Shown here: positions 31,101 to 34,100 of the stretch, piece after piece
Layout: each line of letters starts with the position of its first letter
Position numbering within the stretch: the first letter of the stretch is position 1
Assembly: GCA_035084275.1 (NCBI GenBank)
Contig: CM068771.1
Coordinates: forward strand, 930,001 to 994,000
Origin: Hydrolagus colliei
Taxonomy: Eukaryota
DNA: 64,000 nucleotides
Reading direction: 5' to 3'
The notes under the pieces: generated by a model
Databases searched by the model: none
What the model saw: only the letters and a program-made list of their open reading frames with translations
Told to the model about the DNA's origin: nothing
Made by a program: the position numbers and the translations under genes

Positions 31101-34100
31101 ACTCAATCACTCCACCTCGCCCCCCCCACTCCCTCAATCTCCCTGCCTGGCCACCACTCACCCAACCTCCCTCCCACAGTTTAGGGTCAGATTGTGCCCA
31201 GCCGTCCTCACCTGCAGCATTCCCCCACCGCCCCCCCCCACCCCCGCCTCTCTCTCTCTCTCCCCTTCATCCCCACTCCCATCTTGCCTCCCGCCCGCCC
31301 CCCCTCTCTCCCCCCCCCACTCCCTCAGTGGTCACTGTCCTCAGAAGTGAAGTCATGATCATATTCCTGTGAGTGCCCAGCCCCGACATCACAACCAACA
31401 GAACATCAGCAGCTCAGCCAGGCTCAGCGGCAACTCACACAGATCAGCTGACACGCATAGGATCATCATTAAACAGTGACCACCTTACCCCCCCCCACCT
31501 CAACACCCCCCCCACTACCACCTCACCCACCCCCCACCTCACCTCAACCTCACACCCCCACCACCTCACCCCCCTTCACTTCACCCCCCACCTCAACCTC
31601 ACACCCCTCCCATCTAATCCCCCCCCACCTCAACCACACACCCCCCACCCCACCTCAACCACACACCCCAACCACCTCACCCTCTCACACCTCAACTTCC
31701 CCCCACCCCACATCACCCCATCACACCCTCACCTCACACTCACTCCCCCCACCTCACCTCACACTCACCTCCCCCCCATCTCACCCTCTCACACAACCAC
31801 CCACCCCAACTTACGCTCACCCCCACCTCACCACCTCACCCTCTCAACCCCCACCTCACTCCTCACCGCCACCACCTCACACTCACCTCACCCTCTCCCC
31901 CACTGCTGGAGCTCTCAACTCTATAACCACATTCCCTGCTCTCTCATTCACCCTCTCACAGTGCGCACTGTGTGTTTTGCGGGCGAAACGCGGCAGCCGA
32001 TTGCGCCCAGCGACCTCCCCGCAAACGGTGGTAGACTGCTGAACGGAACTCGCAAGTTGTTCTCAGCATTATTTGTTTCGGACGGATCACTGCCCCAGAC
32101 ACAGTGATCCGCCAATCGACTCACAAGCAGGTTCCTGCTCACTGCTGGTAAACAGGGGTGTGTGTCTGTGGGTGTGTGTCTCTGTGTGGGTGGGTGTGGA
32201 CTAAGGAAACTTGCTCAGTGTTTCTCAGGGCGAAACCTGGGGCAAGTTTCCTTACTCCACACGCCCAATATTTAATAATCCGCCCCCCCCAAAAAACACA
32301 ATAATAAAATTGGTCATTTCAATCCACGACTGTGCGGGGGACGCTGCCGTGCGCAATTGGCTGCCGCGATTCGCCCACAAATATATACAGTCACTTCACT
32401 TTGCAGTACATTCTGTGAAGCGCTTTGAGACGTCGATAAGATGTGAAAAGCGCTATATCAAATACAAGGATTATTATTATTATTATATTGTTATTATGTT
32501 TCACCCTGACCTGCCTGGTATGTGTAAAGGTGAATGGCAGAACAGGCTTGAGGGGCTGAATGGCCTCCCCCTGTTCATATGTCCGCCCCTCTCTGCCTCT
32601 CCACGCCTATCACTGCGATGATATTACGATACAATACAGTTTCGCCTCCACACCCCAGCTCAGAGGGAAACTATGCTCTCAGACACCTTGAGGCATCCTC
32701 CCTGAGCGCTACTGTGTACAGGTAAAGGTGTAACTACTCTGGACTGTAGGGGGTGGGGCAGGGAATGTGGTTAGAGTAGAGAGACACAGTGGGGCAGCGA
32801 GCATCAGCACAGACACTATCAGGGGGGTGAGAGAGAGAGAGAGAGAGAGAGCACGAGCAGGAATATGGTTAGAGTAGAGAGACACAGTGGGGGAGCGAGC
32901 ATCAGCACAGATGGGGAGAGAGTGACACAGCAAGGAATGGGGAGAGAGAGGGAGAGAGAGCGGGAATAGGTTAGAGTAGAGAGCTCCAGTGGGGAGCGAG
33001 ACCCACCACAGATACAATGAAGAGGGAGAGAGAGAGAGAGAGAGAGAGCGGGAATGGGGTTAATGGGGTAGAGAGCTCAGTGGGGGAGCCAGCATAAGCA
33101 GCAACAACAACTTGCATTTAGACAGTTCCCCCTCAGGCAGGGCAGTGTCGCAGAGAGCTGGAGATCGGTGGAGCAGGGAGCTGAGCTGGGGAGAGGTGAC
33201 TGTAGACACGGCCGAACAGGAAGGTCTTCAGGCGCGACCTGAAAATGGGGAAGGAAGGGACGGGATGGAGGGACAGAGGGAGAGAGTGACAGTTTGGGCT
33301 ACAGAACAGCGCCTCTCTAACGAGTCCACACCCTCAGTCCCTGACAGGCCAGCCGTGCAGTCAATAACTCCGGCAGATCAGTGGTTAAGAGTCCGCCCCT
33401 CGCAAGCCAGAGCACCTGGGTTCGATTCCCGGTCAGGTCAGAACCCGAGGCAAGTTTCCTCGCTCCCCACAGACACACGCCTGTGTTTGGCAGTAAATAG
33501 GAACCCGCCTGTTTGGCGATTGGCGGATCAGATTTTCCGGGGGGTAATAATCCTTTAAAATAAACTATTTGGTCTCTCCACCCGCGACTGTTTGTGGGGC
33601 GCTGCTGTGCCTCAGTCACTTCCAGTGACTTCCCCGTGAAGCACTTTGAAGGCGTGTTAATGCACTATATAAAACGCAGGAATTATTCGAACATATTCTA
33701 ATTATCACCGTTATTTCACTCCCAACCCCGGCCTCGCCAACCACGAAACGCACGCATTCACTGTTTGCTAAATGCCGACAACCCTCGCAAACTGCGTTTG
33801 GCGCGTCCGCAATTTTTCATCCCGGTTTCACTCCTCCGAACACGGGACCGCATTCATCCGCGTATTGGTGTGTATTCATCCACTCCGCCTATCAGCACCT
33901 TTACTACCCCGCGTGGTCCAGCCGCACCCGTGGATCTACAAGTACAGTAAGCCAGTCACCCCATCCCCCACCCCAAGCCCTCCGTGTCAACCCCCCCAGC
34001 CCTTCGTGTCACCCCCCCCTACCCTCCATGTCTCTCTCTCTCTATGTAAGTTAGTCAGACATCCACCCCACCCCTCTGTGTCACCCCCCCACCACCACCC

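What the first reader, a model, noticed from the sequence alone, without database searches (positions are those of the whole stretch)
31328..31483. SNORD10/mgU6-77-like box C/D snoRNA hosted in a BRD2 intron
Seen: a unique island between low-complexity repeats, sense to BRD2. It has an 11-bp perfect terminal stem extended by two U-G pairs, K-turn geometry (AAU bulge then GA of box C AUGAUGA), and D', C'-like and D boxes. The guide 5'-UAUGCGUGUCA-G-CUGA pairs 9 bp with U6 (U74-GACACGC-A82), and D'+5 lands on C77. It also pairs 11 bp (two G-U) with the 28S segment UGACGCGCAUG. Established: Cm77 of U6 and a 28S cytidine are guided by mgU6-77/SNORD10, about 150 nt, hosted in EIF4A1 in human. I know of no snoRNA in human BRD2. 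Inference: host switching or an extra copy has placed a spliceosomal-RNA modification guide in an MHC-linked chromatin-reader gene. It sits ~2.2 kb from the 3' splice site, and the long external stem is the known compensation for such a distal position.
Basis: partly seen in the sequence, partly recalled or inferred. Interest (0 to 1): 0.85.

Follow-up and report, generated by a model that had tools for sequence, protein, structure and literature searches.

The report
SNORD10 snoRNA inside a BRD2 intron
A genuine copy of the small RNA that guides methylation of spliceosomal U6 at C77 sits in an intron of BRD2, which is its usual home in sharks, rays and their relatives, whereas bony vertebrates keep it in EIF4A1.

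Summary
Window 31337-31474 (minus strand, sense to BRD2) matches Rfam SNORD10 over the full model, at 44.9 bits against a gathering score of 37 (E 1.7e-6). It has boxes C, D', C' and D, an 11-bp Watson-Crick terminal stem plus U-G pairs, and a guide that puts U6 C77 at D'+5. It lies in the 6.2-kb BRD2 intron that splits bromodomain 1, 2188 nt from the acceptor.

The window is from a cartilaginous fish, not a teleost. BRD2 hosting is lineage-wide:
- White shark BRD2 carries two SNORD10 copies, in intron 2 (as here) and intron 4.
- Skate and stingray keep the intron-4 copy and only decayed relics in intron 2.
- The window keeps only the intron-2 copy.

Frog and turtle BRD2 carry no SNORD10. Mackerel eif4a1a carries two copies, and Xenopus eif4a1 hosts it (PMC8609340). 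The skate and catshark EIF4A1-like genes keep SNORA48-like hits but no SNORD10.

So this is an ancient host-gene difference followed by loss of one or the other duplicate. It is not a recent event in this species. I class it as a new member of a known kind, of modest interest, and probably already picked up by automatic Rfam-based annotation. Expression and methylation remain untested.

The parts
31337..31474 (-). SNORD10 (mgU6-77) box C/D snoRNA, as delimited by the Rfam match
   Evidence: RF01290, 44.9 bits (gathering 37), E 1.7e-6, model positions 1-139; nhmmer profile of 7 copies, E 1.4e-29.
31473..31484 (-). 5' arm of the terminal/external stem (GGUGGUCACUGU)
   Evidence: 11 Watson-Crick bp plus an outer G-U. 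Flank duplex -22.9 kcal/mol; 0 of 300 shuffles reach it.
31327..31338 (-). 3' arm of the terminal/external stem (ACAGUGACCACU)
   Evidence: The stem covaries across 7 copies; 4 of 7 pairs show changes on both sides.
31463..31469 (-). Box C (AUGAUGA)
   Evidence: The UGAUG core and the final A are invariant in all five chondrichthyan copies; one mackerel copy reads UGAAGA.
31449..31459 (-). Antisense guide UAUGCGUGUCA. AUGCGUGUC... pairs with U6 U74-A82; the whole element pairs with 28S UGACGCGCAUG.
   Evidence: 9 bp with U6, C77 at D'+5; 11 bp (2 G-U) with the 28S segment. The core AUGCGUGUCA is invariant in 7 copies.
31444..31447 (-). Box D' (CUGA)
   Evidence: invariant in all copies.
31356..31361 (-). 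Box C' (UGAUCA)
   Evidence: AUGAUCAU is invariant in all copies.
31341..31344 (-). Box D (CUGA)
   Evidence: invariant in all copies.
29149..35375 (-). Host intron of BRD2 (between the exon ending ...VKLSLP and the exon starting DYHKIIKQ...). 6227 nt, GT..AG, with an N run at 30211-30348.
35376..35672 (-). BRD2 exon upstream of the host intron (N-terminus and first part of bromodomain 1)
   Evidence: tblastn, E 1.4e-32; best hits are BRD2 or BRD2-like proteins.
29011..29148 (-). BRD2 exon downstream of the host intron ([25 protein letters not shown]...NCYIYNK)
   Evidence: 93% identity to the human BRD2 probe.

Best explanation
This is a functional intron-encoded box C/D snoRNA, the orthologue of vertebrate SNORD10/mgU6-77.

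Proposed mechanism:
- It is transcribed as part of the BRD2 pre-mRNA and released from the spliced and debranched 6.2-kb intron.
- The long terminal stem brings boxes C and D together into a kink-turn. The core proteins (SNU13/15.5K, NOP56, NOP58, fibrillarin) assemble there, and exonucleases trim the RNA back to the stem.
- The guide upstream of box D' pairs with U6 snRNA U74-A82. Fibrillarin then 2'-O-methylates C77, the nucleotide opposite the fifth guide position from D'.
- The same guide can also pair with the conserved 28S segment GUGA[C]GCGCAUG.

Evolution:
- In cartilaginous fishes the host gene is BRD2, not EIF4A1.
- Two copies existed, in BRD2 introns 2 and 4. This lineage kept the intron-2 copy and batoids kept the intron-4 copy.

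Shown here: family membership, boxes, guide complementarity, the covarying stem, host and intron, and conservation or decay in relatives.

Inferred: expression, snoRNP assembly, and actual methylation of U6 and 28S.
For: - Family match: Rfam SNORD10 hit above gathering, over the full model.
- Conserved features: all four boxes and the AUGCGUGUCA guide are invariant across window, white shark (2 copies), skate, stingray and mackerel (2 copies), apart from one box-C change in a mackerel copy. The rest of the RNA has diverged to 55-68% identity with the window copy.
- Terminal stem: it covaries across copies. In the window it is far stronger than chance.
- Target: D'+5 falls on U6 C77 in every copy. 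SNORD10/mgU6-77 is the recorded guide for U6 Cm77 (PMC7960923).
- Conservation island: the snoRNA is the only conserved island between window intron 2 and white-shark intron 2.
- Decay when redundant: in skate and stingray, which keep an intact intron-4 copy, the intron-2 copy has lost box C, the guide and C'. The window copy keeps everything despite sitting on a long branch. That argues for purifying selection.
- No second copy: none, and no relic, in the window's BRD2.
- Context: sense orientation in a canonical GT..AG intron.
Against: - There are no expression or methylation data.
- This is the lowest Rfam score of all copies examined (44.9, against 56.8-89.3).
- The snoRNA lies 2.2 kb from the 3' splice site, far from the roughly 70-90 nt optimum known for mammalian box C/D snoRNAs (my own knowledge, Hirose and Steitz 2001).
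- The rest of this genome, including its EIF4A1, could not be searched, so another and perhaps principal SNORD10 copy may exist.
- A 354-nt N run in intron 4 (25388-25741) and a 138-nt N run in intron 2 are unread.
Confidence: 0.85

Rival explanations
1. The copy is a redundant or decaying paralogue. The working SNORD10 of this species lies elsewhere (EIF4A1-like gene, another locus, or an unread gap), and this copy is poorly processed because it is 2.2 kb from the acceptor.
For: It has the lowest Rfam score of the set. Intron-2 copies did decay in skate and stingray. The distal position is suboptimal. The genome outside the window was not searchable.
Against: All boxes and the guide are intact, and the terminal stem is strengthened rather than eroded. 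Decayed copies lose box C and the guide quickly. There is no other copy in the window's BRD2. The EIF4A1-like genes of skate and catshark lack SNORD10.
Confidence: 0.1
2. The arrangement is a recent, species-specific insertion or retroposition of SNORD10 into BRD2 (a snoRNA retroposon).
For: snoRNA retroposition is known in vertebrates (PMC1687206). The element is an isolated unique island between simple repeats.
Against: An intact copy lies in the same intron of white-shark BRD2, and decayed relics lie in the same intron of skate and stingray. No poly-A tail or target-site duplication is visible in the flanks.
Confidence: 0.02
3. The match is a chance resemblance in low-complexity sequence and not an RNA gene.
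For: The surroundings are highly repetitive.
Against: E 1.7e-6 across all Rfam families. nhmmer E 1.4e-29. Positional orthologue in shark. The stem covaries.
Confidence: 0.01

Closest known systems
SNORD10 / mgU6-77 (Rfam RF01290), the box C/D snoRNA that guides U6 snRNA Cm77, hosted in EIF4A1 in human, Xenopus and teleosts
   Same: Full-length covariance-model match. Same box order, C - guide - D' - long internal region - C' (UGAUCA) - D. Same length, about 140 nt. An identical AUGCGUGUCA guide that places U6 C77 at D'+5, and the same potential 28S pairing. Intronic and sense to the host gene.
   Different: The host is BRD2 (intron 2) instead of EIF4A1. It lies 2.2 kb from the acceptor. The terminal stem is much longer (11 Watson-Crick bp plus 3 G-U). 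The internal region is strongly diverged (55-68% identity to other copies). Guide position 12 is U instead of C, which still pairs with 28S as a G-U.
BRD2-hosted SNORD10 copies of other cartilaginous fishes (Carcharodon carcharias introns 2 and 4; Leucoraja erinacea and Hypanus sabinus intron 4)
   Same: Same host gene and strand. The window copy shares its intron with white-shark copy A, along with the G before box D' and the ACAGU 3' stem motif.
   Different: The window lacks the intron-4 copy that skates and rays rely on. Its own copy is the most divergent and has the strongest external stem.
Distally placed intronic box C/D snoRNAs with external stems (splicing-independent assembly; Hirose and Steitz 2001 and Hirose et al. 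2003, cited from my own knowledge)
   Same: Long distance to the 3' splice site combined with an extended stem flanking the C/D core.
   Different: The dependence of processing on the stem was not tested here. White-shark copy B sits only about 140 nt from its exon yet has a stem as strong as copy A.

Membership tests
SNORD10 (Rfam RF01290) | Covariance-model score at or above the curated gathering score, over the full model | tested here: met
   44.9 bits against 37, model positions 1-139, E 1.7e-6.
SNORD10 (Rfam RF01290) | Guide upstream of box D' complementary to U6 snRNA, with C77 opposite the fifth nucleotide from D' | tested here: met
   9 contiguous Watson-Crick pairs, U74-A82, with C77 at D'+5.
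SNORD10 (Rfam RF01290) | Host gene EIF4A1 (typical of human, frog and teleost; not a defining property of the RNA family) | tested here: not met
   The host is BRD2. EIF4A1 hosting is seen in mackerel and Xenopus (PMC8609340).
Box C/D snoRNA | Box C (RUGAUGA) near the 5' end and box D (CUGA) near the 3' end, brought together by a terminal stem (kink-turn) | tested here: met
   The stem covaries across 7 copies.
Box C/D snoRNA | Internal D' and C' boxes, with about 10-21 nt of guide upstream of D' | tested here: met
   D' CUGA at 31447-31444 and C' UGAUCA at 31361-31356, invariant across copies.
Box C/D snoRNA | Accumulates as a stable RNA of about 140 nt bound by fibrillarin, NOP56, NOP58 and SNU13 | not testable with these tools
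Box C/D snoRNA | The target nucleotide is 2'-O-methylated in a guide-dependent way | not testable with these tools
   This needs RiboMeth-seq or primer extension on U6 and 28S from this species.
Intron-encoded snoRNA | Lies within an intron, in the sense orientation relative to the host transcript | tested here: met
   minus strand like BRD2, inside the GT..AG intron 35375..29149.

The most novel reading that the evidence does not exclude
BRD2, not EIF4A1, may have been the ancestral jawed-vertebrate host of the U6-C77 guide, alongside the SNORD12-type snoRNA that BRD2 still carries in shark and perhaps in turtle. On this reading bony vertebrates moved SNORD10 to EIF4A1. That would tie a spliceosomal-RNA modification guide to an MHC-linked chromatin reader in the earliest gnathostomes. 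The weaker version is well supported by my evidence: the two great gnathostome lineages use different hosts for SNORD10, and the duplicated intronic copies were lost reciprocally. The direction of the move is open.
Probability: 0.3. Interest if true: 0.4.

Novelty: new member of a known kind. Interest (0 to 1): 0.3.

Why it matters
This is a clean, datable example of a snoRNA changing host gene between the two main jawed-vertebrate lineages while its guide, boxes and target stay fixed. Two intronic paralogues were then lost reciprocally: shark keeps both, rays keep intron 4, and this lineage keeps intron 2.

It shows that the identity of the host, a translation factor or a chromatin reader, is not essential for the function of this U6 guide. 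It also provides a natural series for studying how distance to the 3' splice site and external-stem strength co-vary.

It changes nothing about what SNORD10 is understood to do. Host changes of snoRNAs are already a recognised phenomenon (PMC1687206, PMC2653536, PMC13736004).

Tried and rejected
1. A second SNORD10 copy or relic in the window's BRD2, especially upstream of exon 4b where rays carry theirs. None was found at Rfam E <= 1 or nhmmer E <= 10. That stretch is a G/T-rich tandem repeat.
2. SNORD10 in tetrapod BRD2. None in frog or turtle at gathering or at E <= 0.1.
3. SNORD10 in the chondrichthyan EIF4A1-like gene. None in skate or catshark. The tree shows this gene is distinct from true EIF4A2 but does not resolve it as sister to bony-vertebrate EIF4A1. 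Only its sub-threshold SNORA48-like hits support the orthology.
4. Loci that could not be fetched: Amblyraja and Rhinoraja BRD2, Polypterus eIF4A and Callorhinchus eIF4A isoforms were 'not on record'.
5. Teleost BRD2 introns could not be reached. Teleost proteins did not appear in the top 120 hits, which were crowded by birds, and no eukaryotic DNA collection is searchable.
6. Literature on SNORD10 in BRD2 or in sharks: nothing found. The BRD2 poison exon 3b and its flanking RNA structure (PMC10789245) lie in the next intron downstream and are unrelated.
7. Literature confirmation of the 28S target position: not found. The 28S pairing therefore rests on my memory of the conserved 28S segment and of Tycowski et al. 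1998.
8. Species identity: not determinable. On the tree, the window's BRD2 is inside the cartilaginous-fish clade, outside the rays, on a long branch. A chimaera-like or otherwise unannotated lineage is possible.

Full report
**Observation**

On the minus strand, window 31484-31327 reads 5'-GGUGGUCACUGU UU AA UGAUGA UCC UAUGCGUGUCA G CUGA ... UGAUCA UGACUUCACUU CUGA GG ACAGUGACCACU-3'.
- An 11-bp Watson-Crick terminal stem, 31483-31473 with 31328-31338.
- Two inner U-G pairs and one outer G-U pair.
- Box C at 31468-31463, box D' at 31447-31444, box C' (UGAUCA) at 31361-31356 and box D at 31344-31341.

The duplex formed by the two flanks has dG -22.9 kcal/mol, against -8.8 +/- 2.5 for shuffled flanks, and 0 of 300 shuffles reach it. 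The Rfam SNORD10 model (RF01290) matches 31474-31337 over its full length, at 44.9 bits against a gathering score of 37. The E-value is 1.7e-6 for the whole 64-kb window against all 4227 families.

**Host gene**

A tblastn probe and a database search show a BRD2 gene on the minus strand, running from about 35.7 kb to about 14 kb. The snoRNA is sense to it. It lies in the 6227-nt GT..AG intron between the exon ending ...[10 protein letters not shown] (35376) and the exon beginning DYHKIIKQ (29148). This is the intron that splits bromodomain 1. The snoRNA 3' end is 2188 nt from the acceptor.

A beta-2-microglobulin exon lies about 15 kb away on the same strand, at roughly 50490-50745. It matches beta-2-microglobulin chains in the PDB with E-values from 3e-15 to about 1e-12. 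This fits an MHC-linked BRD2 of the cartilaginous-fish type.

**What animal**

The best BRD2 matches are skates, and their 90% cluster contains sharks and rays. On a tree the window's BRD2 falls inside the cartilaginous-fish clade (support 100/100), outside the rays, on a long branch. So this is a cartilaginous fish, not a teleost.

**Relatives of the snoRNA**

I fetched orthologous loci with their introns and scanned them.

| Locus | Result |
|---|---|
| Leucoraja erinacea BRD2-like | One SNORD10, 68.3 bits, in intron 4 (PTDDIV... exon to QVP... exon) |
| Hypanus sabinus BRD2-like | One SNORD10, 73.2 bits, same intron 4, about 150 nt before the exon |
| Carcharodon carcharias BRD2-like | Two SNORD10: copy A in intron 2 (56.8 bits, same intron as the window, about 1 kb from the acceptor) and copy B in intron 4 (58.9 bits); plus a SNORD12 in a later intron (55.5 bits) |
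| Skate and stingray intron 2 | Decayed relics of copy A: L001:7779-7887 (E 1.8e-9) and L005:6797-6893 (E 8e-4), with box C, guide and C' destroyed |
| Window BRD2 | No intron-4 copy or relic |
| Window intron 2 against shark intron 2 | The only conserved island is the snoRNA |

The window copy also shares with shark copy A the G before box D' and the ACAGU 3' stem motif.

The simplest history has two BRD2-hosted copies in the elasmobranch ancestor, or earlier. Rays then lost the intron-2 copy, and this lineage either lost the intron-4 copy or never had it.

**Other hosts**

- Frog and turtle BRD2 carry no SNORD10, at gathering or at E <= 0.1.
- Mackerel eif4a1a carries two nearly identical copies, at 89.3 and 85.2 bits and 99.3% identity to each other.
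- Xenopus tropicalis eif4a1 hosts snoRD10 together with snoRA48 (PMC8609340).
- The second eIF4A1/2-type gene of skate and catshark forms a clade distinct from true EIF4A2. It carries sub-threshold sense-strand SNORA48-, SNORA81- and SNORA4-like matches but no SNORD10.

So bony vertebrates host SNORD10 in EIF4A1 and cartilaginous fishes host it in BRD2. This is a host change, not merely an extra copy, at least in skate and catshark. Its direction cannot be set without a cyclostome outgroup.

**Function**

Across seven copies the boxes and the core guide AUGCGUGUCA are invariant, apart from one box-C change in a mackerel copy. Overall identity to the window copy falls to 55-68%. The terminal stem covaries, with 4 of 7 pairs changed on both sides.

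In every copy the guide pairs 9 bp with U6 U74-A82 and places C77 opposite the fifth nucleotide from D'. It also pairs 11 bp with 28S UGACGCGCAUG. The window's C-to-U change at guide position 12 keeps that pair as a G-U (the U6 and 28S sequences come from my own knowledge). SNORD10/mgU6-77 is the recorded guide of U6 Cm77 (PMC7960923).

Redundant copies in rays lost box C and the guide. The window copy retained everything despite its long branch, which indicates purifying selection.

I therefore conclude, at about 0.85 confidence, that this is a working SNORD10. It would be released from the BRD2 intron, assembled on a kink-turn formed with the help of the long external stem, and would direct fibrillarin to U6 C77 and probably to a 28S cytidine. 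Expression and methylation are inferred, not shown.

**The external-stem idea**

| Copy | Flank duplex (kcal/mol) | Distance to downstream exon |
|---|---|---|
| Window | -22.9 | 2.2 kb |
| Shark A | -15.9 | about 1 kb |
| Shark B | -15.9 | about 140 nt |
| Skate | -7.4 | about 135 nt |
| Stingray | -8.6 | about 150 nt |

The trend agrees with the known use of external stems by distally placed box C/D snoRNAs (my own knowledge, Hirose and Steitz). Shark B is an exception and the sample is small.

**Comparison and novelty**

This is a member of the SNORD10 family by every sequence test available. It differs from the textbook case only in host gene, intron position, stem length and a diverged interior. 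I found no paper placing SNORD10 in BRD2 or describing it in cartilaginous fishes.

Rfam-based automatic annotation of the RefSeq shark and ray genomes probably already labels these loci. This is an inference that I could not check. Host-gene changes of snoRNAs are a recognised phenomenon.

Verdict: new member of a known kind, interest about 0.3.

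Noticed in passing
window 50490-50745 (-): This is a beta-2-microglobulin Ig-domain exon (GIPQVQMYTRHAPVDGEKNVLICYVSKFAPP... / ...NAIVELMEGERVLQEAQQSDLTFETDWSYFLFKHIDFTPRKGVQYGCKVRHSTFDNGQRITTW). It lies about 15 kb upstream of BRD2 on the same strand. 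The reading frame changes inside a run of nine C, which may be a homopolymer-length error or a real frameshift. B2M next to BRD2 is the arrangement reported for shark MHC (my own knowledge, Ohta et al. 2011).
   Followed up: partly
L004:16715-16805 (+) and L003:10768-10855 (+): White-shark BRD2 carries a SNORD12/SNORD106-type snoRNA (55.5 bits, above gathering) in the intron after the [13 protein letters not shown] exon. Turtle BRD2 has a sub-threshold match (37.3 bits, gathering 43) in the same intron. BRD2 may therefore be an old snoRNA host outside mammals. The window has no such match.
   Followed up: partly
L006:6902-7043, 9519-9692, 9981-10084; L008:1230-1363, 2194-2331, 4168-4343: The second eIF4A1/2-type gene of skate and catshark carries sense-strand sub-threshold matches to SNORA48 (a partner of SNORD10 in human EIF4A1). 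It also matches SNORA81 and SNORA4 (human EIF4A2 snoRNAs). This suggests a mixed or ancestral snoRNA set.
   Followed up: partly
L001:7779-7887 and L005:6797-6893: These are decayed SNORD10 pseudogenes in intron 2 of skate and stingray BRD2. Box C, guide and C' are lost, and the skate relic has an internal deletion of about 15 nt. They are positional orthologues of the window copy.
   Followed up: yes
window 14363-14435 (+) and 53995-54067 (+): There are two tRNA-Ala(CGC)-like sequences (ARAGORN; Rfam 37.6 and 45.1 bits). One lies inside a BRD2 intron, antisense to the gene. A third weak tRNA-like match is at 22777-22842 (-). They could be tRNA genes or tRNA-derived SINE heads.
   Followed up: no
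window 32145-32255 (-), 13963-14046 (+), 15976-16045 (+): There are three sub-threshold matches to the Rfam model EBv-sisRNA-1 (35.4, 25.1 and 20.6 bits; gathering 58). They are most likely a dispersed repeat that resembles that model by composition. One lies in the same intron as the snoRNA.
   Followed up: no
window 31449-31456 with 31356-31364 (alignment A3, columns 33-40 and 131-139): RNAalifold pairs the guide core GCGUGUCA with the C' box region UGAUCAUGC in all seven copies. Both sides are invariant, so there is no covariation. This could be an intramolecular structure that masks the guide, or it could be coincidence.
   Followed up: no
L007:5035-5174 and 6223-6362: The two SNORD10 copies in mackerel eif4a1a are 99.3% identical to each other. 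This points to recent duplication or gene conversion. One of them has UGAAGA instead of UGAUGA in box C.
   Followed up: no
window 23740-24400 and 31100-31330, 31490-31700: BRD2 introns are packed with G/T-rich and C-rich minisatellite-like tandem repeats on the gene strand. The window's BRD2 protein sits on a branch about ten times longer than those of other elasmobranchs. The lineage of the animal is unresolved.
   Followed up: partly
window 1-10200 and 61100-63000: There are several LINE reverse-transcriptase fragments, for example 61818-62471 (-), 6824-7207 (+) and 9542-10192 (-), with the recurring C-terminal motif ...RVVGIWNALPEKVVEADSIT.FKRELD...
   Followed up: no
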